From the IMG/VR virus record IMGVR_UViG_3300046003_007892, positions 124,001 to 188,000 of that record: a DNA stretch of 64,000 nt; one strand, written 5' to 3'. Positions 5,863-22,960 of the stretch are shown here, piece by piece. Below the pieces are notes generated by a model that was not told where the DNA came from, ran no database searches, and saw only the letters and a program-made list of their open reading frames with translations. The position numbers and the translations under genes are program-made. The first letter of the stretch is position 1, and each line of letters starts with the position of its first letter.

Positions 5863-7731
5863 ATGACAACGACCAAAGAGTGGAAAAAGCTCAGCCCATA
5901 TCAACAAGCCCGCCAACGGACAGAGATGTGGCTAGGCTCACGCGACCCCCATACGCAATCCATTCTCGAATATACCGAGGATGGACCGGTCTCGGTTTCG
6001 ACGACCTGGGTCCCGGCCCTGTTCACCGCGTTCCGCGAACTCTTCGACAACGCTCTCGACGAAGTCGTCTCGCACGGCAACGGTGACCGCATCGACGTCA
6101 GCTATGATGAGACCAGCAAGGTGTTCAGCATCCGAGACAACGGACGCGGTGTCCCCATCGAATGGGACGAGACCGAACAGAAATATGCCGCCACCGTCCT
6201 CCTATCTGAGCAGAACGCGGGACGGAACTTCGAGGATGACCGTGGTGCGACTCGCGGTCTGAATGGCGTCGGCGGCGCCGTGGTCAATTTCACCTCGGAA
6301 TATTTCCTCGCACACATCATTCGTGGCGGTCAGTCCTTCACCCAGAGGTTCGTCGAAGGTTTGGAGCACGTCGCCGAAGACCCCGTCATCCTTCCGGCCA
6401 AGAAATCCGACGTCAACGGGACCCGCATCGAGTTCAAGCTCTCGAAGAAAGTCTTCAAGGACATGCGCCTGCCCGAATCGTTCATTCGTTCGCGAATGTT
6501 CGAGGCCGCCCTCTGCTACCCGAATCTCAAGATTTTCTACAACGGCAAGCAGGTGAAAACGCGCGGCGTCGAGAAAGACCTGTTCCCGAAAAGGAAGCCC
6601 ATCACGGTCGAGATCGACGAGCCCGGTTTCCGCTCACGCTTCTGGTTGGTCCCGCAGTTCTTTGCCGATGGAACCGAGACCTCCCACAGTCTCGTCAACG
6701 CCATCCCGATGTTCAATGGCGGCGTGCACATCGACACCTTCAAGCGGATGTTCTTCTCCGGGCTCATCAACGCGCTGGCCAAGGAATCGAAAAAGCGCAA
6801 GCTGACGCCGAACCGCTCCGACCTCGCGGACGGAATGCTGATCTACAACATCACCGAGATGGATGCCCCGCATTTCGACAGCCAGTCGAAGACCCGAGTC
6901 ATCAACGAAGGGGTGAACAAGATCGTCACCGCCGCGCTCGACAACCCGGATTTCTTCAAGAACGTCATCCGCAAAAATGGTGAATGGATTGAGGACGTCT
7001 ACAAGCGGTGCGCCGAGCGGACCCTGAAGAAAGAATCGTCGGAAATCTCCAAGCTGGCCAAGAAGGGCGGCAAGGTCCGCGTGGCCAAACTCAAGGACGC
7101 CACCCACTCCGACCGCCAGCAGTGCAGCCTCTACATCACCGAGGGCGATTCGGCCGTTGGTGGTCTCGTCGATGCCCGCGACGCCCGCATCCATGCCGCC
7201 ATGCCCCTGAAGGGGAAGGTGATGAATGTGCACGGCATGTCGCCCAAGCAGATTTACGAGAACGAAGAACTGGCCAGGATGATGAACGCCATCGGGCTCG
7301 TGCCCGGCCAGCGCGTGAACCGCCATCTGCTCCGCTATGGCCGCGTCTACATCACCTGCGACGCCGACGAGGACGGTAAGTCGATCACCGGCCTGCTGAC
7401 CAACTTCTTCTACCTGAACTGGCCGGAGCTTTTCGAGGCCGACCGCCCGTTCATCCACGTCTTCGACACCCCGCTCATCATTGCGGCGAAAGGCAAAGAG
7501 CGGAAGTATTGGTACGCCGACAATGAGCACACGTTCAAGCAGGAAGATTTCAAGGGCTGGGAGATCACCCGTGCCAAGGGTCTGGCCCAGTTGAAGAAAC
7601 CGGACTGGCAGTTCGCGCTCAATAATCCGAAGTCCATCCCGCTCACCGATGACGGCGACCTCAATGCCGCCTTGTCACTGATCTTTGACCCCAAAAAAGC
7701 CGACGCCCGCAAAGAGTGGATTGGCATCTAA
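5863..7731 (+). CDS. DNA topoisomerase II large (ATPase+TOPRIM) subunit, T4 gp39/60-like
   Basis: FRELFDNALDE, DNGRGVP, GLNGVG, EGDSA, PLKGK, DADEDG. Confidence 0.97.
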   Translation: MTTTKEWKKLSPYQQARQRTEMWLGSRDPHTQSILEYTEDGPVSVSTTWVPALFTAFRELFDNALDEVVSHGNGDRIDVSYDETSKVFSIRDNGRGVPIEWDETEQKYAATVLLSEQNAGRNFEDDRGATRGLNGVGGAVVNFTSEYFLAHIIRGGQSFTQRFVEGLEHVAEDPVILPAKKSDVNGTRIEFKLSKKVFKDMRLPESFIRSRMFEAALCYPNLKIFYNGKQVKTRGVEKDLFPKRKPITVEIDEPGFRSRFWLVPQFFADGTETSHSLVNAIPMFNGGVHIDTFKRMFFSGLINALAKESKKRKLTPNRSDLADGMLIYNITEMDAPHFDSQSKTRVINEGVNKIVTAALDNPDFFKNVIRKNGEWIEDVYKRCAERTLKKESSEISKLAKKGGKVRVAKLKDATHSDRQQCSLYITEGDSAVGGLVDARDARIHAAMPLKGKVMNVHGMSPKQIYENEELARMMNAIGLVPGQRVNRHLLRYGRVYITCDADEDGKSITGLLTNFFYLNWPELFEADRPFIHVFDTPLIIAAKGKERKYWYADNEHTFKQEDFKGWEITRAKGLAQLKKPDWQFALNNPKSIPLTDDGDLNAALSLIFDPKKADARKEWIGI

Positions 7732-7734
7732 GAC

Positions 7735-9078
7735 ATGAAAACTTCAGAATATATTCTCAAGACCAACCGCGAATATTCCCTCTACGTCTGCTCGCAGCGG
7801 GCCATCCCCAATATCGAAGACGGGCTCAAACCCTCTCAGCGGATGCCGTTGTGGCTGCTGCGGAACAAGGCCGGGAAGATCAAGGTCTCGGCTCTCTCGG
7901 GCATGCTGGCGGCCGAGAAAATCTACAATCACGGTGAGATGTCGGCCAACAACGCCATCTCCCTCCTGGCGGCGCCGTTCAAGAACAACAACTGCCTCAT
8001 CGAAGGCGTCGGTATGTTCGGCAGCCGCGTGGTTCCCGATGGCATCGGGGCCCCTCGTTATGTCGAGGTCGCCCGTGCCGCCATCTCAGAGAAGGTTCTC
8101 TACCGGGACCTCGATCTCGTTCCCCAGACGGAGAACTACGACGCTTCGACCATGCAGCCCATCCACATGCTGCCCATCATCCCTCTGGTGCTCCTCAACG
8201 GCATTGAGGGCATCGCGGTCGGTTGGTCCACCTCCATCCTGCCCAGGTCTCTGAAGGCCATCGTAGACGCCAGCATCGCCGCCCTTGAAGGCAAGAAGAT
8301 CAAGACCCTGGTGCCCCACTACGGCCGGTATGACGTCAGCGTCGCGCCTCTGGCCGTCAACCAGTGGGAAATCCGTGGCAAGGTCAAGATCGAAGACACC
8401 TCGACGATTCGCGTCACCGAGCTTCCTCCGGGCCTGCACGTCGAGAACTTCCTCAAGCGTCTCGACGAGATGGAAGACCGCGATCAGATCACCGGCTTCA
8501 CCGACAACTCATCCGAGGCCATCGACATCGTCGTCCGTTTCAAGCGCGGCACCCTGAAAGCATGGGACGAGGAGTCGGCCATCGACTTCCTCAAGCTGAA
8601 GGAGAAAGTCACCGAGCGCATCACCGTCGTCGATTTCGGCGGGCAGTCCATCCGCACCTATGAGAATGCCGAAGAGGTCGTCAAGGCTTTCGTCCAGTGG
8701 CGTCTGGGTTGGTATTCAAAGCGGTTCGACAAGATGCTCGCCGACGCCGTCTATGAGGTCAACTACTGGCGAGTCCTCAAGGCCCTGTTCGATGACGGCT
8801 TCACCAAACGACTCGGCACGTTCGCCGACAGGTCAGCCGTTGAAGCCGACGTCGAAAAGGTCTCGAAGAAGGTTAAGCTCAACCTGGACGCCAAGCAGTT
8901 GGACCGTGTCGTCAACCTCCCGACCTACCGGTGGACGAAGGCGTTCGAGGCCGACGTGGATGCCAAGATCATCGACATCGACGGGGCCATCTCCGACTAT
9001 CAGGCCATTCTGTCATCGCCGGACCTCCTCAAGTCCGTCTACGCGGGGGAACTCGACGAACTGCGGAAGAAAATCTGA
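7735..9078 (+). CDS. DNA topoisomerase II breakage-reunion subunit, T4 gp52-like
   Basis: RAIPNIEDGLKPSQR, YNHGEMS, GAPRY (catalytic Tyr), LLNGIEGIAVGWST; no CTD. Confidence 0.97.
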   Translation: MKTSEYILKTNREYSLYVCSQRAIPNIEDGLKPSQRMPLWLLRNKAGKIKVSALSGMLAAEKIYNHGEMSANNAISLLAAPFKNNNCLIEGVGMFGSRVVPDGIGAPRYVEVARAAISEKVLYRDLDLVPQTENYDASTMQPIHMLPIIPLVLLNGIEGIAVGWSTSILPRSLKAIVDASIAALEGKKIKTLVPHYGRYDVSVAPLAVNQWEIRGKVKIEDTSTIRVTELPPGLHVENFLKRLDEMEDRDQITGFTDNSSEAIDIVVRFKRGTLKAWDEESAIDFLKLKEKVTERITVVDFGGQSIRTYENAEEVVKAFVQWRLGWYSKRFDKMLADAVYEVNYWRVLKALFDDGFTKRLGTFADRSAVEADVEKVSKKVKLNLDAKQLDRVVNLPTYRWTKAFEADVDAKIIDIDGAISDYQAILSSPDLLKSVYAGELDELRKKI

Positions 9079-15654: not shown

Positions 15655-15730
15655 GCGTCGTTAGCTCAGATGGTAGAGCATCGGCTTCTAACACCGAGGG
15701 TCACGGGTTCGAGTCCCGTCCGACGCGCCA
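15655..15730 (+). tRNA. tRNA with CUA anticodon (amber suppressor candidate)
   Basis: 76 nt; D stem GCTC/GAGC; anticodon stem TCGG/CCGA with C31-A39 mismatch puts CTA at 34-36 (15688-15690); T arm ACGGG/CCCGT; G73, encoded CCA. Confidence 0.85.
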
Positions 15731-16757: not shown

Positions 16758-17013
16758 GGCGCGAAAGAAAAAATGTTTCCGGCGCCTCTACACGCCGGAC
16801 TCGACCGGACTCGAATTCCGTTTCGATTTCGTTCGTCCGCTGGGTTCTCGGGCGCGGGCAACGCACCCTCTACGGGATGACCAGTTGCAGGAAATGTGGG
16901 GGCATTGGAGCCGTGACAGCATCGAGCTAGATGACGAGCGGCAGATGATCTCGCTCTACTTTGAGGATGAACGTGATTTTGTCCTCGCCAGCCTGACAAT
17001 TCCCGCAGAATAA
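16750..17013 (+). CDS. Probable small-family protein lacking a canonical start codon
   Basis: Frame open 16741-17013 ending LYFEDERDFVLASLTIPAE; possible ATC start after GGGGG. Confidence 0.45.
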   Translation: MPKARKKKCFRRLYTPDSTGLEFRFDFVRPLGSRARATHPLRDDQLQEMWGHWSRDSIELDDERQMISLYFEDERDFVLASLTIPAE

Positions 17014-17055
17014 GCTTGCCAGGATGGCAACGGGCCTGTAAGGAAAGATTTCTAC

Positions 17056-17146
17056 GCGAGGGTGCCAGAGCATTCAAATGGGCCGGACTGCAAATCCGGT
17101 GGAGCCAATAACTCCTACGAAGGTGCGAATCCTTCCCCTCGCTCCA
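17056..17146 (+). tRNA. tRNA-Cys(GCA) with long variable arm (class II / Tyr-like scaffold)
   Basis: Acceptor GCGAGGG/CCCTCGC, U73, CCA; CCGGA-CTGCAAA-TCCGG; V-arm GGAG-ccaataa-CTCC; T arm GAAGG-TGCGAAT-CCTTC. Confidence 0.88.
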
Positions 17147-17164: not shown

Positions 17165-17641
17165 GTGAATGTCGTAGACGAACACGAATACGGCGACGAC
17201 GGCTACCTTCTCGAAATTCGCGACTGGTGGGGCGGAGAAAGCATCGGTGCCTTCGGTCATATCCCCATCAAGGAAGTCGCCACGCAGGCTCGGCGCGACG
17301 GTAGGTCGTTCGGCTCCCAGGTTCGCGACATCCGTGCATCGGAAGGCTACTACCTGAAATCCATCAACTACGGCGCCTACCATGAACTTCGAGTTGAGTT
17401 CGAAGGTCGGGCGGGTCGCCGGACCATAACCTTGGCTGAAATCTCGGACGCCGTCTACCGCACGTTTTTGGAGTTCAGCGTTTCGTTCGAGAAACCTTGG
17501 ACGTCGATGGTGGTCAGAGCCAGGAACAAACTCCCGGAAGGCTTCATCGTTGGTTTTCAGAGCGACGCCGACCTGACCAAATACATCATGATGCTGGACG
17601 CCGCGATTGCCAGCCTGAACAAACCCTTTATAGTCAAGTAG
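17165..17641 (+). CDS. Hypothetical protein (small-family motif at C-terminus)
   Basis: GGAG SD, GTG start; [16 protein letters not shown]. Confidence 0.7.
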
Positions 17642-17649
17642 GCCCCAAG

Positions 17650-19596
17650 ATGAGCAAGTATCGCACCCACACCTGTGGCAAAGTAGACAAATGGACCGCT
17701 GGCGTCCGGGTCAAGCTCTCCGGCTGGGTCCATTCGCGTCGCGATCACGGTGGCCTGTGCTTCATCGATCTCCGGGACAACTACGGCATCGTCCAACTCG
17801 TCGCCCACCCCGAGAGCCCCGCTTTCGCTATCCTCAACGATGTCCGCCTCGAAAGCGTGATCTGCGTCGAGGGACCGGTGATTATGCGGGCCAAGGAACA
17901 CGTCAACGCCAATCTGGCTTCCGGCGAGGTCGAGGTTCAGGTCATGGCCTGCGAAGTTCTCAGCGAAGCCGAACCCCTTCCGGTGCCGGTCGTGCCGCCG
18001 CGCAACAAGGAAGGTGAGGAAGTCCTCTACCCGGAAGAGCTTCGCCTCAAGCACCGCTATCTCGACCTCCGCCGTGACGCCCTGCACCGCAACATTCTCC
18101 TCCGCAGCGACGTCATCGCTCATATTCGCGAGGGCATGATCTATCAGGGATTCCGGGAGTTTCAGACCCCCATCCTGACCGCCTCTTCGCCCGAGGGGGC
18201 GCGGGACTTCCTGGTGCCCTCCAGGGTCCATCCGGGCCAGTATTACGCCCTCCCGCAGGCCCCGCAGCAGTTCAAGCAACTCCTCATGGTCGCGGGCTTC
18301 GACCGCTATTTCCAGATCGCTCCCTGTTTCCGCGACGAGTCCGCGCGTGCCGACCGCAGCCCTGGTGAGTTCTACCAACTCGACATCGAGATGTCGTTCG
18401 TCGAGCAGGACGAAGTCTTCGCTGTCGCCGAAAAGATTCTGTCGAGCACCTTCGAAAAGTTCGCCCCCAAAGGCATGACCGTCGATCAGGCGCCCTACGT
18501 CCGTATTCCCTACCGGGAATCCATTCAGCGTTTCGGCTCCGACAAGCCCGATCTCCGAAACCCTCTGGAGTTCCGTGACGTCACCGAAACTTTCCGGGAC
18601 GGTGACTTCCCGTTCTTCGCCGACATGATCGCCAAGGACCCCGAGGCCCGCGTCTGGGGCATCGTGGCTTACGACAAGCAGTATCTGCAAGGCCTGCACG
18701 ACCCTCTGCTCCCCGAAGGCTATCCACTGGTCACGTCGGGTTTCTGCAAGAAAATGGACCAGTGGGCCAAAGACGAGGGACGGGGTCTGGCTTATATCCG
18801 CTACGCCGACGACCCCTATGTCGATGGCGTGACCCCCTATGCCCATCGCCCGCATGGGCCGGTGGCGAACAAGATCGGCGAAGACGCGGCTGGCAAGATC
18901 GGCCAGGACTTCAACATCCTCGACGCCAACGAGTGTGCCATCTTCTTCGTCGCGGGGCGGCCGGATGAGATGTATAAGTTCGCCGGACTGGTGCGCACCA
19001 AGCTGGGAGAAGAACTCGACCTGATCGAGAAGAATGCCTTCAGGTTCTGTTGGGTGGTTGACTTTCCCATGTTCGAACTCAACGACGAAGGCCGGGTGGA
19101 TTTCTCCCACAACCCCTTCTCGATGCCACAGGGCGAGATGGACGCTCTGGAGAACCAGAACCCGCTCGACATTCTCGCCTATCAATACGACATCGTCTGC
19201 AACGGCATCGAACTCTGCTCGGGCGGCATTCGGAACCACAAGCCGGAGATCATGCTCAAGGCTTTCGAGATCGCCGGGTATGGGCCCGAGATTGTCGAGC
19301 AGCAGTTCGGCGGTATGCTCAATGCTTTCCGCTACGGGGCTCCCCCGCATGGCGGCATGGCGCCCGGTATCGACCGCATCGTCATGCTCCTGGCTGGTGA
19401 GGAGAGCATCCGCGACGTCATCGCCTTCCCGCTCAACCAGCAGGGCCAGGATTTGATGATGAACGCGCCCGCGCCGCCGACCGAGAAACAGGTTCGGGAA
19501 CTCGGCCTGAAGGTTCGTCTCAAGGATGGGCCGCACCTCATCGACGGCAAGACCGCAGACGTCAAGAACGGCGTCATCACGGTGGTGCAGGGGTAG
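17650..19596 (+). CDS. aspS: Aspartyl-tRNA synthetase, probably non-discriminating
   Basis: YRTHTCG, RRDHGG (His at the ND position), [35 protein letters not shown]. Confidence 0.98.
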
Positions 19597-21972: not shown

Positions 21973-22287
21973 ATGGAATGGTTCACCGAAAAATATGCAG
22001 CCCTGATGGCCAACGAAGTTTTCGTCTCGTTGGCCATGAGCGTGATCGCAGCCGTTGGCTCCACCATGCTGGTCGTCATGCCCCTCCTGGTCTGGTGCGC
22101 ATGGCGGGTGCGGAAGCACATGGCCGACATGGTCAACTGGGACGTCGTCCGCGTCGTCACCACGCAGGCCCACGAATATCAGATTCATCGAACCACCGGC
22201 AAGCGACGTGTGACCTCGCGTCTCATCCCCGTTCCGCCCATCGACAAAGACTGGCTGGCCGGTCGCACGGAGAAACTCCATGACTGA
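21973..22287 (+). CDS. Hypothetical membrane protein
   Basis: One TM segment; upstream TTGACA promoter. Confidence 0.65.
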   Translation: MEWFTEKYAALMANEVFVSLAMSVIAAVGSTMLVVMPLLVWCAWRVRKHMADMVNWDVVRVVTTQAHEYQIHRTTGKRRVTSRLIPVPPIDKDWLAGRTEKLHD

Positions 22288-22960
22288 CGCTCCAATCAAG
22301 ACGGCGGCCGAAATAAGCCGCGAGTATCGTCGCAGCCTCAACAAATGGCAGATCGCTTTTCTGTATCTGTTCTGCGCTTGCGCCATCGCCTTCCTTGTTG
22401 TGATCATCGCCGCCGTGAACGGTTTCCTACCGGAATCGTATCTCAAGACGGCGGTCGAGACTTTTCCGTGGGTCATCGGGCCGATCTTTGGCGCCATCAT
22501 GGTCTTTCAAACCATGAGCATCATTGCCGAAGGCAAAGCCTTACTGGCGAGAGATGTGCGCATCGCCGCCCTGATGGCCCGCCGCTACAAAATCTACACA
22601 GTGGTCTCCCGTGAGGCCATGGCCAAGATGGGCGACGAGGTCGGCAAGATGTTCGCACAGGGCGGACACGCCGCCCTTCATGCTTGGTGGGATTCCTTCA
22701 CTCGCTTCCCCCTGTTTGCTAAGGCGTACAAGGACAGCCAGCACGCTTTCAAGATCACTCTGGTCGTGGACACCGATGCGGAGCTTGAGGCCCTCTACGA
22801 GGCCTTCCAGCCGATTTGCGGGGTATCCCTGGTTCGAGACGCCGGGTTCACCGTTTTCAAGGAGCCCACGATCACCTGTTTGGGCATCGGCCCCATCGCC
22901 GACGAGGACCGGGGTGCGCTGGCCGACCTGAAGACCCTGAGGCCCGCCAAGTCGAAATGA
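22280..22960 (+). CDS. Pth2-type peptidyl-tRNA hydrolase with N-terminal two-TM extension
   Basis: GKMFAQGGHA, KITLVV, VRDAGFT, TITCLGIGP; two hydrophobic helices in the first 85 aa. Confidence 0.88.
   Translation: MTDAPIKTAAEISREYRRSLNKWQIAFLYLFCACAIAFLVVIIAAVNGFLPESYLKTAVETFPWVIGPIFGAIMVFQTMSIIAEGKALLARDVRIAALMARRYKIYTVVSREAMAKMGDEVGKMFAQGGHAALHAWWDSFTRFPLFAKAYKDSQHAFKITLVVDTDAELEALYEAFQPICGVSLVRDAGFTVFKEPTITCLGIGPIADEDRGALADLKTLRPAKSK

What the first reader, a model, noticed from the sequence alone, without database searches (positions are those of the whole stretch)
17056..17146. tRNA-Cys built on a class II (Tyr-like) scaffold with altered elbow
Seen: GCA anticodon and U73 (Cys identity) combined with a 3-bp D stem, a 19-nt variable region with a 4-bp stem, and a GAAGG/CCTTC T arm like bacterial tRNA-Tyr. 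The D loop lacks G18G19 and the T loop has G55. Established: bacterial tRNA-Cys is class I, and SerRS recognises long V-arms. Inference: a nuclease-resistant Cys tRNA, or a substrate for phage SerRS (Ser at UGC, or an indirect Cys route).
Basis: partly seen in the sequence, partly recalled or inferred. Interest (0 to 1): 0.65.

Follow-up and report, generated by a model that had tools for sequence, protein, structure and literature searches.

The report
Phage cysteine tRNA with extra arm
A giant lake-water phage carries a real cysteine tRNA with a long extra arm, one member of a widespread and apparently undescribed phage tRNA type that most likely still carries cysteine, not serine.

Summary
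Window 17056-17146 (+) is a 91-nt tRNA with anticodon GCA, U73, encoded CCA, 7-bp acceptor stem, 3-bp D stem, 19-nt variable region with a 4-bp stem, no GG in the D loop and G55 in the T loop.

It is not a one-off. The window lies in a 240-kb fragment of a megaphage. Long-arm tRNA-Cys with the same plan (7/5, 3-bp D stem, U73) turned up in at least 64 distinct IMG/VR phage loci and in cultured Rhizobium phage B1VFA. It was almost absent from bacterial genomes.

The serine reading is not supported:
- The arm geometry and acceptor stem are not Ser-like.
- UGY codons in this phage sit at conserved Cys positions.
- 50 other phages with this tRNA encode neither SerRS nor CysRS.
- No SepCysS/SelA homologue was found.

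Best reading: a working Cys tRNA charged by CysRS (this phage encodes one). The G55 / no-GG elbow matches a recurrent A18:G55 covariation in phage tRNAs.

Why the arm exists is inferred. The same phage clade puts extra arms on Lys, Asn and Thr tRNAs, the known targets of anticodon-stem nucleases, so a shield against tRNA-cutting defence nucleases is plausible but untested.

The parts
17056..17146 (+). Class II-type tRNA-Cys(GCA), 91 nt with encoded CCA
   Evidence: ARAGORN; Rfam RF00005 50 bits; MFE = cloverleaf; identical in contigs from three further lake samples
17065..17081 (+). D arm: 3-bp stem CCA/UGG and 11-nt loop GAGCAUUCAAA with A18 U19 (17072-17073) in place of G18 G19
   Evidence: Sequence. 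The 3-bp D stem is supported by covariation in 60 related tRNAs. Loss of GG covaries with G55 across phage tRNAs.
17083..17099 (+). Anticodon arm CCGGA-CUGCAAA-UCCGG; anticodon GCA at 17090-17092; A37; CNG triplets at 28-30 and 40-42
   Evidence: Sequence. Nearly identical arm in the nearest relative, L297.
17100..17118 (+). Variable region, 19 nt: U44, 4-bp stem GGAG/CUCC, 7-nt loop, 3 unpaired 3' nt (UAC)
   Evidence: hairpin -4.1 kcal/mol. The geometry is Tyr-like, not Ser-like.
17119..17135 (+). T arm GAAGG-UGCGAAU-CCUUC with G55 (17125) and C56
   Evidence: Sequence. G55 with A18 recurs in 17 other phage tRNAs.
17143..17146 (+). Discriminator U73 and encoded CCA
   Evidence: Sequence. U73 occurs in 58 of 60 class II tRNA-Cys.
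17497..19596 (+). Context: phage aspartyl-tRNA synthetase, 350 bp downstream
   Evidence: NF001750 740 bits; Pfam PF00152/PF01336
49799..51151 (+). Context: phage seryl-tRNA synthetase, full length with N-terminal arm
   Evidence: TIGR00414 419 bits, positions 4-416 of 418; PF00587
15655..15730 (+). Context: class I tRNA with CUA (amber-reading) anticodon
   Evidence: ARAGORN; Rfam 57.7 bits; no sign of TAG recoding in the 240-kb record

Best explanation
This is a functional elongator tRNA that reads UGC/UGU and is charged with cysteine by CysRS. The phage's own CysRS is encoded 3.7 kb upstream of the window, and host CysRS is also a candidate. CysRS would recognise the GCA anticodon and U73. 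The body is a class II body: 3-bp D stem and a variable arm of Tyr-like geometry.

The tRNA belongs to a widespread, phage-restricted type of long-arm tRNA-Cys. In most phages that type must work with host enzymes.

Shown here: the structure, its recurrence, its covariation, the Cys meaning of UGY, and the lack of linkage to phage SerRS or CysRS.

Inferred: charging by CysRS.

Inferred with less confidence (about 0.3): the extra arm, perhaps together with the A18:G55-type elbow, is kept because it makes the tRNA a poor substrate for host tRNA-cutting defence nucleases that dock on or cut the anticodon stem next to positions 44-48. The phage would then keep a working Cys tRNA when host tRNA-Cys is destroyed.
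For: Structure and detection.

Family:
- A control pattern of equal information content (G55) gave 113 loci in all, with only 3 such tRNAs.
- The same pattern over 596 Gb of bacterial and archaeal genomes gave 7 in 120 loci. [quoted passage not shown]
- Cultured example: Rhizobium phage B1VFA, annotated tRNA-Cys-GCA, 87 nt.

Shared plan over 60 distinct sequences: U73 in 58, 3-bp D stem in 56, V stem of 3-4 bp in 49. 18 of 20 cloverleaf pairs show compensatory changes. The 60 tRNAs have 59 different V regions, and 42 of 60 fold better than 95% of shuffles.

Cys, not Ser.

Works without phage synthetases: 0/50 records with CysRS and 0/50 with SerRS, including 17 records at least 90% complete. 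It is the only Cys tRNA in 3 of 4 complete genomes examined; those four were picked from the records already found to hold a long-arm tRNA-Cys.

Elbow: G55 goes with loss of GG (U55+GG 1146, G55+noGG 18, U55+noGG 16, G55+GG 1; Fisher p 1.5e-29).

Shield idea:
- In the five related megaphages the long-arm forms are Lys UUU/CUU, Asn GUU, Thr UGU/CGU, Gln, Ile UAU and Cys.
- Over all the loci, long forms make up 25% of Asn GUU, Thr UGU and Lys UUU against 6.7% of other class I isoacceptors (p 5e-8).
- Those three are the relevant targets of the PARIS nuclease AriB, which cuts between 40 and 41 (PMC12409363).
- P2 OLD cuts the anticodon stem at 28-30 and 40-41. The tRNAs named as inactivated include Cys and are all class I (PMC12445682).
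- Class I Lys-UUU copies in three of the four megaphages that have one (G000, G001, G003) carry the AriB motif UAAUCA at 36-41, while all five class II copies differ at position 41.
Against: - No charging, expression or nuclease data exist for this tRNA. No RNA run holds it.
- U19 opposite C56 would break the 19:56 pair, and this is unique among the G55 tRNAs seen (17 of 18 have A18 G19). The elbow may therefore be weakened rather than re-engineered.
- The isoacceptor overlap with AriB and OLD targets is post hoc and comes from E. coli systems. The host here is unknown.
- This tRNA keeps the CNG/CNG/A37 features of OLD substrates, so any resistance would have to come from architecture alone.
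- 17 of 60 class II Cys have Ser-like arm geometry, with 1 unpaired 3' nt, so some family members might be dual substrates.
- The loci were selected with a Cys-specific pattern, so how often phage tRNA-Cys is class II cannot be estimated without bias.
Confidence: 0.7

Rival explanations
1. The extra arm has no function of its own. The tRNA descends from a class II tRNA (Ser-GCU, Ser-GGA or Tyr-GUA are each one anticodon change from GCA) that switched identity by an anticodon change plus N73 to U. The arm is carried along because CysRS does not care about it.
For: With anticodon and N73 masked, class II Cys tRNAs score best on phage Ser (39/60) or Tyr (12/60) profiles rather than on class I Cys (8/60). 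Class II Cys genes sit beside Ser and Tyr genes (G003 order Ser-Ser-Ser-Cys-Tyr-Tyr; G037). CysRS identity rests mainly on GCA and U73 (PMC7609411).
Against: In 0 of 40 loci is a co-resident Ser, Tyr or Leu gene closer than the nearest foreign class II Cys, so there is no sign of recent local remoulding. The arm hairpin is kept through near-total sequence turnover. The arm geometry and acceptor stem have moved away from Ser. The type is the sole Cys tRNA even in a phage with only three tRNAs (G048). The non-random choice of isoacceptors with extra arms suggests selection.
Confidence: 0.3
2. It is a SerRS substrate: the phage SerRS serylates it through the long arm. That would give Ser at UGY codons or Ser-tRNA(Cys) for an indirect route to Cys.
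For: Long arm present; phage SerRS present. SerRS ignores anticodons, and U73 is tolerated in some tRNA-Ser (15/70 phage tRNA-Ser here; allo-tRNA discussion in PMC5389517). Its best masked profile score is on Ser.
Against: - The arm is a 4-bp stem with 3 unpaired 3' nt, against the Ser pattern of 5-7 bp with 1 nt.
- The acceptor starts GCG, not GGA.
- UGY aligns to Cys 40% and Ser 5%, symmetric between phages with and without this tRNA.
- The CysRS zinc ligands C28/C209 are encoded by UGY.
- No SepSecS/SepCysS or SelA homologue was found.
- SerRS is present in all five megaphages whether or not they have class II Cys, and in 0/50 other carriers.
Confidence: 0.05
3. It forms a private pair with the phage CysRS: the arm and the odd elbow make it a poor substrate for host enzymes and a good one for the phage enzyme. 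The phage would then keep Cys decoding under its own control.
For: A CysRS gene lies about 21 kb from the tRNA gene in the same record, and the family match starts at residue 70 of the longest ORF. All five related megaphages encode CysRS.
Against: The phage CysRS aligns end to end with E. coli CysRS, including the anticodon-binding domain. Relatives with the same CysRS have only class I Cys tRNAs (G001, G002, G004) or both kinds (G003). 50 other carriers of class II Cys have no CysRS at all. The 69-residue 'extension' may simply be a mis-called start.
Confidence: 0.1
4. It is a decaying tRNA gene, or a tRNA used outside translation, for example as an aminoacyl donor. The loss of G18/G19 and of U55 would then reflect relaxed or different constraints.
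For: U19:C56 cannot pair. From my own memory, not checked here: the non-proteinogenic tRNA-Gly of Staphylococcus also lacks GG and has UGC in place of T-psi-C. No RNA evidence exists.
Against: All 24 stem pairs (acceptor 7, D 3, anticodon 5, variable 4, T 5) are Watson-Crick, and CCA is encoded. The tRNA is identical in three further lake samples, although a neighbouring stretch varies in one of them. A18 with G55 is a recurrent covariation found in many isoacceptors and in whole tRNA sets of some phages. It is the only Cys tRNA found in the 240-kb record.
Confidence: 0.1

Closest known systems
Canonical bacterial/phage class I tRNA-Cys
   Same: GCA anticodon, U73, 7/5 acceptor/T branch, 3-bp D stem (16 of 23 class I phage Cys here), and an anticodon arm of the usual kind.
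   Different: Variable region of 19 nt with a hairpin instead of 4-5 nt. D loop without GG, and G55 in the T loop.
selC* tRNA-Cys (Mukai et al. 2017, PMC5389517; review PMC7609411)
   Same: A Cys-identity tRNA (GCA or UCA, U73) with a long variable arm. This shows that CysRS-type enzymes can charge long-arm tRNAs.
   Different: selC* has a Sec-like 8/4 branch with an A51a bulge, a long D stem, dedicated CysRS*/SelB* partners, and occurs in anaerobic bacteria. This tRNA is 7/5 with a 3-bp D stem and occurs in phages, most of which have no synthetase.
allo-tRNAs (PMC5389517) and nematode nev-tRNAs (PMC3333845)
   Same: Long-arm tRNAs that carry anticodons of class I amino acids.
   Different: Those keep Ser or Leu identity and are charged with Ser or Leu, giving missense or suppression. 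allo-tRNAs are 8/4 or 9/3. Here the identity elements point to the anticodon's own amino acid, and UGY is read as Cys.
Bacterial tRNA-Tyr and tRNA-Ser (class II)
   Same: 3-bp D stem, G9, D-arm sequence and a variable hairpin. The arm geometry is like Tyr, and the masked sequence profile is closest to Ser.
   Different: Anticodon GCA, U73 (Tyr has A73; Ser mostly G73), no GGA acceptor start, and an arm shorter than in Ser.
Nuclease-resistant phage tRNAs (T5 tRNA-Lys/Thr/Asn against PARIS AriB, PMC11464382 and PMC12409363; phage tRNA-Thr against P2 OLD, PMC12445682; T5 tRNA-Tyr against retron-Eco7, PMC11555353)
   Same: Phage-encoded copies of tRNAs that host defence nucleases destroy. The isoacceptors that carry extra arms in this phage clade (Lys, Asn, Thr) are the same ones.
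   Different: The known cases escape by base changes in the anticodon stem-loop or by overexpression. An added variable arm has not been reported as an escape device in the papers I could search.

Membership tests
tRNA (Rfam RF00005) | Cloverleaf scoring above the gathering threshold | tested here: met
   50 bits against a threshold of 29; ARAGORN call
tRNA-Cys identity set | GCA anticodon and U73 discriminator | tested here: met
   17090-17092 is GCA and 17143 is T
tRNA-Cys identity set | Actual aminoacylation with cysteine by CysRS | not testable with these tools
   Indirect support only: UGY is read as Cys
Class I tRNA architecture | Variable loop of 4-5 nt | tested here: not met
   19-nt variable region with a 4-bp stem
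Class II tRNA architecture | Variable arm over 10 nt with a stem, plus a 3-bp D stem | tested here: met
   D stem covariation
tRNA-Ser (SerRS substrate) | Long variable stem (5-7 bp) with one unpaired 3' nt | tested here: not met
   4 bp and 3 unpaired nt, against the Ser pattern in 70 phage tRNA-Ser
tRNA-Ser (SerRS substrate) | G73 and an acceptor stem starting GGA | tested here: not met
   U73 and GCG. However, 15/70 phage tRNA-Ser also have U73
Bacterial tRNA-Tyr | GUA anticodon and A73 | tested here: not met
   GCA and U73; 37 of 38 phage tRNA-Tyr have A73
selC* tRNA-Cys | 8/4 acceptor/T branch with a bulge, and a long D stem | tested here: not met
   7-bp acceptor stem, 5-bp T stem, 3-bp D stem
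allo-tRNA | 8/4 or 9/3 acceptor/T branch | tested here: not met
   7/5 branch
Phage long-arm (class II) tRNA-Cys, as delimited here | 7/5 branch, 3-bp D stem, variable region of 14-23 nt with a 3-5 bp hairpin, GCA, U73, phage context | tested here: met
   All met. The record is an IMG/VR virus contig.
Phage long-arm (class II) tRNA-Cys, as delimited here | Consensus elbow (GG in the D loop, UUC in the T loop) | tested here: not met
   A18 U19 and G55. Three other members share A18 and G55 (L366, L379, L427).
Nuclease-resistant phage tRNA | Resistance to a defined host tRNase, and rescue of infection | not testable with these tools
   Circumstantial only

The most novel reading that the evidence does not exclude
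Adding a variable arm, and in some cases swapping the G18:psi55 elbow pair for A18:G55, is a general structural counter-defence of phages that has not been recognised. It would turn class I tRNAs (Cys most widely; Lys, Asn and Thr in this megaphage clade and in cultured Proteus and Rhodobacter phages) into class II shapes. Their own synthetases would still charge them, but anticodon-stem-cutting defence nucleases of the OLD/AriB kind, or other tRNases, could no longer dock on or cut them.
Probability: 0.3. Interest if true: 0.8.

Novelty: new variant of a known kind. Interest (0 to 1): 0.62.

Why it matters
Textbooks restrict long variable arms in bacteria and their phages to tRNA-Leu, -Ser, -Tyr and -Sec. 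The data here show a recurrent phage type of long-arm tRNA-Cys. In one megaphage clade and some cultured phages there are also long-arm Lys, Asn and Thr tRNAs. These sit in public records annotated as ordinary tRNAs.

If they are charged with their cognate amino acids, two things follow. CysRS, LysRS, AsnRS and ThrRS would tolerate a class II body. Phages would also be selecting tRNA architecture, not only anticodon-loop sequence.

If the arm blocks defence nucleases, that adds a new kind of move to the tRNA arms race between phages and bacteria. It would also offer a simple design rule for nuclease-proof or orthogonal tRNAs.

The A18:G55 covariation is a natural alternative to one of the most conserved tertiary pairs in tRNA.

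Tried and rejected
- **Exact relatives of this tRNA.** An exact-motif search in IMG/VR gave 0 hits. BLAST against cultured phages gave none, and against E. coli genomes none.
- **Synteny.** Loci found through the neighbouring AspRS do not carry the tRNA at the same place.
- **Cultured homologues of other class II Cys sequences.** Several BLAST searches found only tRNA-Ser or tRNA-Tyr, or nothing. One found Rhizobium phage B1VFA.
- **TAG recoding** as the reason for the nearby CUA tRNA. TAG ends 75 of 317 called genes, with no excess of gene-like read-through. The crude ORF-coverage test was uninformative.
- **Recent origin from a co-resident Ser, Tyr or Leu gene.** Not seen in 0/40 loci. The comparison is biased, however (best of many against best of few, and pattern-forced identities), and monophyly of the family could not be shown. 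For this tRNA the best foreign Ser (0.70) is as close as the best foreign class II Cys in IMG/VR (0.67).
- **Variable arm in the family alignment.** MAFFT plus RNAalifold did not recover it, because arm lengths differ. It was tested separately by shuffling.
- **Literature.** Nine searches found no description of long-arm Cys, Lys or Asn tRNAs in phages. That library lacks most subscription journals, so this is not proof of novelty.
- **Reads.** Only DNA contigs were available, so nothing can be said about expression or RNA ends.
- **Not used.** The large protein searches, structure prediction and complex prediction, because the question is about an RNA.

Full report
**1. What is at the coordinates**

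ARAGORN finds two tRNAs in the window. One has a CUA anticodon, at 15655-15730. The other is tRNA-Cys(GCA) at 17056-17146 on the + strand. Rfam's general tRNA model matches 17056-17143 at 50 bits (threshold 29), and no other family competes. The minimum-free-energy fold of the 91 nt is the cloverleaf plus an extra hairpin.

Read base by base:
- a 7-bp acceptor stem with no mismatch
- U8 G9
- a 3-bp D stem (CCA/UGG) with an 11-nt loop GAGCAUUCAAA
- anticodon stem CCGGA/UCCGG with loop CUGCAAA
- a 19-nt variable region (U44, stem GGAG/CUCC, 7-nt loop, then UAC unpaired)
- T stem GAAGG/CCUUC with loop UGCGAAU
- U73 and an encoded CCA

**2. Where the window comes from**

The window is bases 124001-188000 of a 240,363-bp IMG/VR virus record, rated 45% complete. 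That makes it a fragment of a phage of roughly half a megabase. Public runs holding it are lake-water metagenomes. Contigs from three further samples cover the tRNA without a single difference, although one of those strains differs at 19 places just downstream.

The record holds 24 tRNA genes. The tRNA lies 350 bp upstream of a phage AspRS. The window also holds a PTH2-domain protein and a full-length SerRS. A full-length CysRS lies 3.7 kb before the window start.

**3. The tRNA is one of several long-arm tRNAs in this phage and its relatives**

In the same record, four tRNAs with class I anticodons are 87-94 nt long: Asn GUU, Lys UUU, Lys CUU and this Cys. Normal-length Lys UUU and Lys CUU lie beside the long ones.

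The AspRS led to four related megaphage records of 415-608 kb. I fetched them whole. Each has 52-69 tRNAs, and every one has long-arm Lys tRNAs. The other long-arm forms are:
- Asn in three of the five phages
- Cys in two (G000 and G003; in G003 it lies between Ser and Tyr genes)
- Gln UUG in two
- Thr in two
- Ile UAU in one
- CUA tRNAs in two

**4. Long-arm tRNA-Cys is common in phages and rare in cells**

A pattern asks for the Cys anticodon loop, then a gap that only a long variable region can fill, then a standard T loop. ARAGORN calls a tRNA-Cys(GCA) of 80 nt or more in 61 of them, on contigs from 6 kb to 527 kb.

A control pattern of the same information content, with G55 in the T loop, returned 113 loci in all and only 3 such tRNAs. 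That sets the chance background.

Two of these have the 8-bp acceptor and long D stem of selC*-type tRNAs. Three lie among 4, 10 and 31 tRNA genes within 8-kb loci, as in phage tRNA arrays; one of these is identical to a gut phage tRNA. Two fit neither description: L248, with two tRNA genes in its locus, and L330, with one and a poor acceptor stem.

A cultured example exists. Rhizobium phage B1VFA carries an 87-nt tRNA annotated simply as tRNA-Cys-GCA. Proteus phage 1, a T5-like phage, has an 85-nt tRNA-Asn. Rhodobacter phage RcXuper has an 88-nt tRNA-Lys(CUU).

**5. The family plan**

Over 60 distinct long-arm Cys sequences:
- the discriminator is U in 58
- the D stem has 3 bp in 56
- the variable stem has 3-4 bp in 49
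- 38 have three or more unpaired nucleotides on the 3' side of the arm

An alignment of the 60 gives the 7/3/5/5 cloverleaf, with compensatory changes at 18 of 20 pairs. The variable regions are almost all different (59 distinct), yet 42 of 60 fold better than 95% of their own shuffles. The hairpin is therefore kept while its sequence turns over.

**6. Ser or Cys?**

Arm and acceptor stem. The phage tRNA-Ser in the same data have one unpaired nucleotide after a 5-7 bp arm (55 of 70), start GGA (52 of 70) and mostly have G73. tRNA-Tyr have short arms with two to four unpaired nucleotides and A73. The window tRNA has Tyr-like geometry, starts GCG and has U73. U73 alone is weak evidence, because 15 of 70 phage tRNA-Ser also have it.

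Codons. The phage's CysRS aligns end to end with E. coli CysRS and keeps the zinc-ligand cysteines. Over 161 alignments to the three relatives that lack a long-arm Cys tRNA, this phage's Cys codons face Cys in 40% of columns and Ser in 5%. The rest follow the usual Cys spectrum (Ala, Val, Leu, Ile). The reverse comparison gives 46% and 5.6%. UGY therefore means Cys here.

Enzymes. No SepSecS/SepCysS or SelA homologue is in the record.

Other carriers. Of 50 other phage records with a long-arm Cys tRNA, none encodes CysRS and none encodes SerRS above the family cut-off, including 17 records rated at least 90% complete. In three of four complete genomes examined, chosen from those carriers, it is the only Cys tRNA. 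One of these phages has just three tRNAs. The type must therefore work with host enzymes.

All five megaphages encode both CysRS and SerRS, whether their Cys tRNAs are short, long or both. This argues against a private pairing of arm and synthetase.

**7. The elbow**

All three long-arm Cys tRNAs found with G55 also lack GG in the D loop and have AG instead. Across 1,188 phage tRNAs collected here, the counts are (Fisher p 1.5e-29):
- U55 with GG: 1,146
- G55 without GG: 18
- U55 without GG: 16
- G55 with GG: 1

The G55 tRNAs cover many isoacceptors, and in some phages several tRNAs of one array. G18 to A thus goes together with U55 to G, an alternative to the G18:psi55 tertiary pair.

The window tRNA fits at A18 and G55. 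It is the only one with U rather than G at position 19, which would leave U19 opposite C56. Its nearest relative (80% identity, on a 7.6-kb contig binned with a Christensenellaceae genome) has an almost identical D and anticodon arm, but with GG and UUC. The window tRNA's elbow is therefore derived.

**8. Origin**

With anticodon and discriminator masked, long-arm Cys tRNAs score best on a phage Ser profile in 39 of 60 cases, Tyr in 12 and class I Cys in 8. The window tRNA scores Ser 24.4, Tyr 17.4 and class I Cys 9.9 bits. Ser-GCU, Ser-GGA and Tyr-GUA are each one base from GCA, so an identity switch from a class II ancestor is likely.

No co-resident Ser, Tyr or Leu gene is closer than the nearest foreign long-arm Cys (0 of 40). 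There is thus no sign of recent local remoulding. That comparison is biased, and I could not show that the family is a single clade.

**9. Why keep the arm?**

This part is inference.

Which tRNAs carry extra arms. The isoacceptors with extra arms are not a random set. Leaving out Cys (which was selected for) and the normal class II species, long forms make up 25% of Asn GUU, Thr UGU and Lys UUU (28 of 112) against 6.7% of all other class I isoacceptors (45 of 675) (p 5e-8).

What defence nucleases target. Those three are the biologically relevant targets of AriB, the Toprim nuclease of the PARIS defence system. AriB cuts between positions 40 and 41 of the anticodon stem, and T5 escapes it with its own variant tRNAs (PMC12409363). 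[quoted passage not shown] All of these are class I (PMC12445682).

Geometry. A variable arm leaves the tRNA body at positions 44-48, directly next to the cut strand.

Paired copies. In three of the four megaphages that have one, the class I Lys UUU copy carries the AriB motif UAAUCA at 36-41. All five long-arm copies differ at position 41.

For Cys, the window tRNA keeps A37 and CNG triplets on both strands of the stem. Any protection would therefore have to come from shape.

All of this is consistent with the arm acting as a shield, but it is post hoc, rests on E. coli systems, and is untested.

**10. Comparison with known kinds**

The tRNA fails the defining 8/4 or 9/3 branch of selC* tRNA-Cys and of allo-tRNAs. 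It also fails the Ser and Tyr identity sets (see the membership table).

What it shares with selC* is that a Cys-identity tRNA can carry a long arm. What it shares with allo- and nev-tRNAs is a class I anticodon on a class II body. Those are charged with Ser or Leu, whereas here the code is unchanged.

Nine full-text searches found no paper describing long-arm Cys, Lys, Asn or Thr tRNAs in phages. The library misses most subscription journals.

**11. Verdict**

The Ser reading is not supported. The tRNA is most likely a working Cys tRNA of a widespread phage type that has not been pointed out, with a rare variant of a recurrent alternative elbow. The adaptive role of the arm is open; a shield against tRNA-cutting defence nucleases is the best lead.

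Noticed in passing
window 15655-15730 (+): A class I tRNA with a CUA (amber-reading) anticodon, Rfam 57.7 bits. All five related megaphages carry one or two CUA tRNAs, two of them with long arms. TAG nevertheless ends 75 of 317 called genes in this record, with no excess of gene-like read-through, so there is no sign of TAG recoding in the 240 kb available.
   Followed up: partly
outside the window: G000:C1 40741-40829 (-), 83023-83116 (-), 83131-83217 (-): The same phage has long-arm tRNA-Asn(GUU) of 89 nt, tRNA-Lys(UUU) of 94 nt and tRNA-Lys(CUU) of 87 nt. The two Lys genes lie beside normal-length Lys UUU and Lys CUU genes. Long-arm Lys tRNAs occur in all five related megaphages and share the T arm GUGGGUUCGAGUCCCAC with the long-arm Thr tRNAs.
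   Followed up: partly
many loci, e.g. L366:3529-3616, L379:4556-4642, L427:6069-6155, several tRNAs in L219; G000:C1 42533-42607: In phage tRNAs, G55 in the T loop goes with AG instead of GG in the D loop. Counts: U55+GG 1146, G55+noGG 18, U55+noGG 16, G55+GG 1 (p 1.5e-29). This covers Leu, Ala, His, Trp, Gln, Phe, Asp, Gly, Lys and Cys tRNAs and amounts to an alternative A18:G55 tertiary pair.
   Followed up: partly
G000-G004 Lys UUU genes: Class I Lys-UUU copies in G000, G001 and G003 have UAAUCA at positions 36-41, the E. coli AriB cleavage motif. All five long-arm Lys-UUU copies differ at position 41, and some at 38-39. This looks like sensitive and resistant copies kept side by side.
   Followed up: partly
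L510:1494-1578 (Proteus phage 1, MT679223) and L511:1495-1582 (Rhodobacter phage RcXuper, OP186293): Cultured phages carry an 85-nt tRNA-Asn(GUU) (in a T5-like Demerecviridae phage) and an 88-nt tRNA-Lys(CUU). Both are annotated as ordinary tRNAs and could serve as experimental systems.
   Followed up: partly
phage tRNA-Ser in all loci: 15 of 70 distinct phage tRNA-Ser have U73 instead of G73.
   Followed up: no
window 17016-17030: A small hairpin (UUGCCA-GGA-UGGCAA) lies directly after a TAA at 17011-17013 and 25 nt before the tRNA. No sigma-70-like promoter lies between the upstream ORF and the tRNA, so the tRNA is probably processed out of a longer transcript.
   Followed up: no
window 22280-22960 (+); 5863-9078 (+); 17497-19596 (+): A PTH2 (peptidyl-tRNA hydrolase 2) domain sits in a 226-aa protein. 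There is a type II topoisomerase pair (GyrB-like and ParC/GyrA-like). The AspRS family match begins at residue 53 of a 699-aa ORF.
   Followed up: no
G004:C1 379988-380070 (-); G025 (19th tRNA listed); G011 (first two tRNAs listed): An 83-nt tRNA-like gene with a 6-nt anticodon loop lies next to tRNA-Tyr in G004. G025 has a 77-nt tRNA with a UCA (opal-reading) anticodon. The gut phage G011 has two CUA tRNAs.
   Followed up: no
L280 (contig WGMA01000024.1, Phycisphaera MAG): 31 tRNA genes lie within an 8-kb locus of a 128-kb contig binned as a bacterial genome, including a long-arm tRNA-Cys. This is probably a phage or prophage tRNA array.
   Followed up: no
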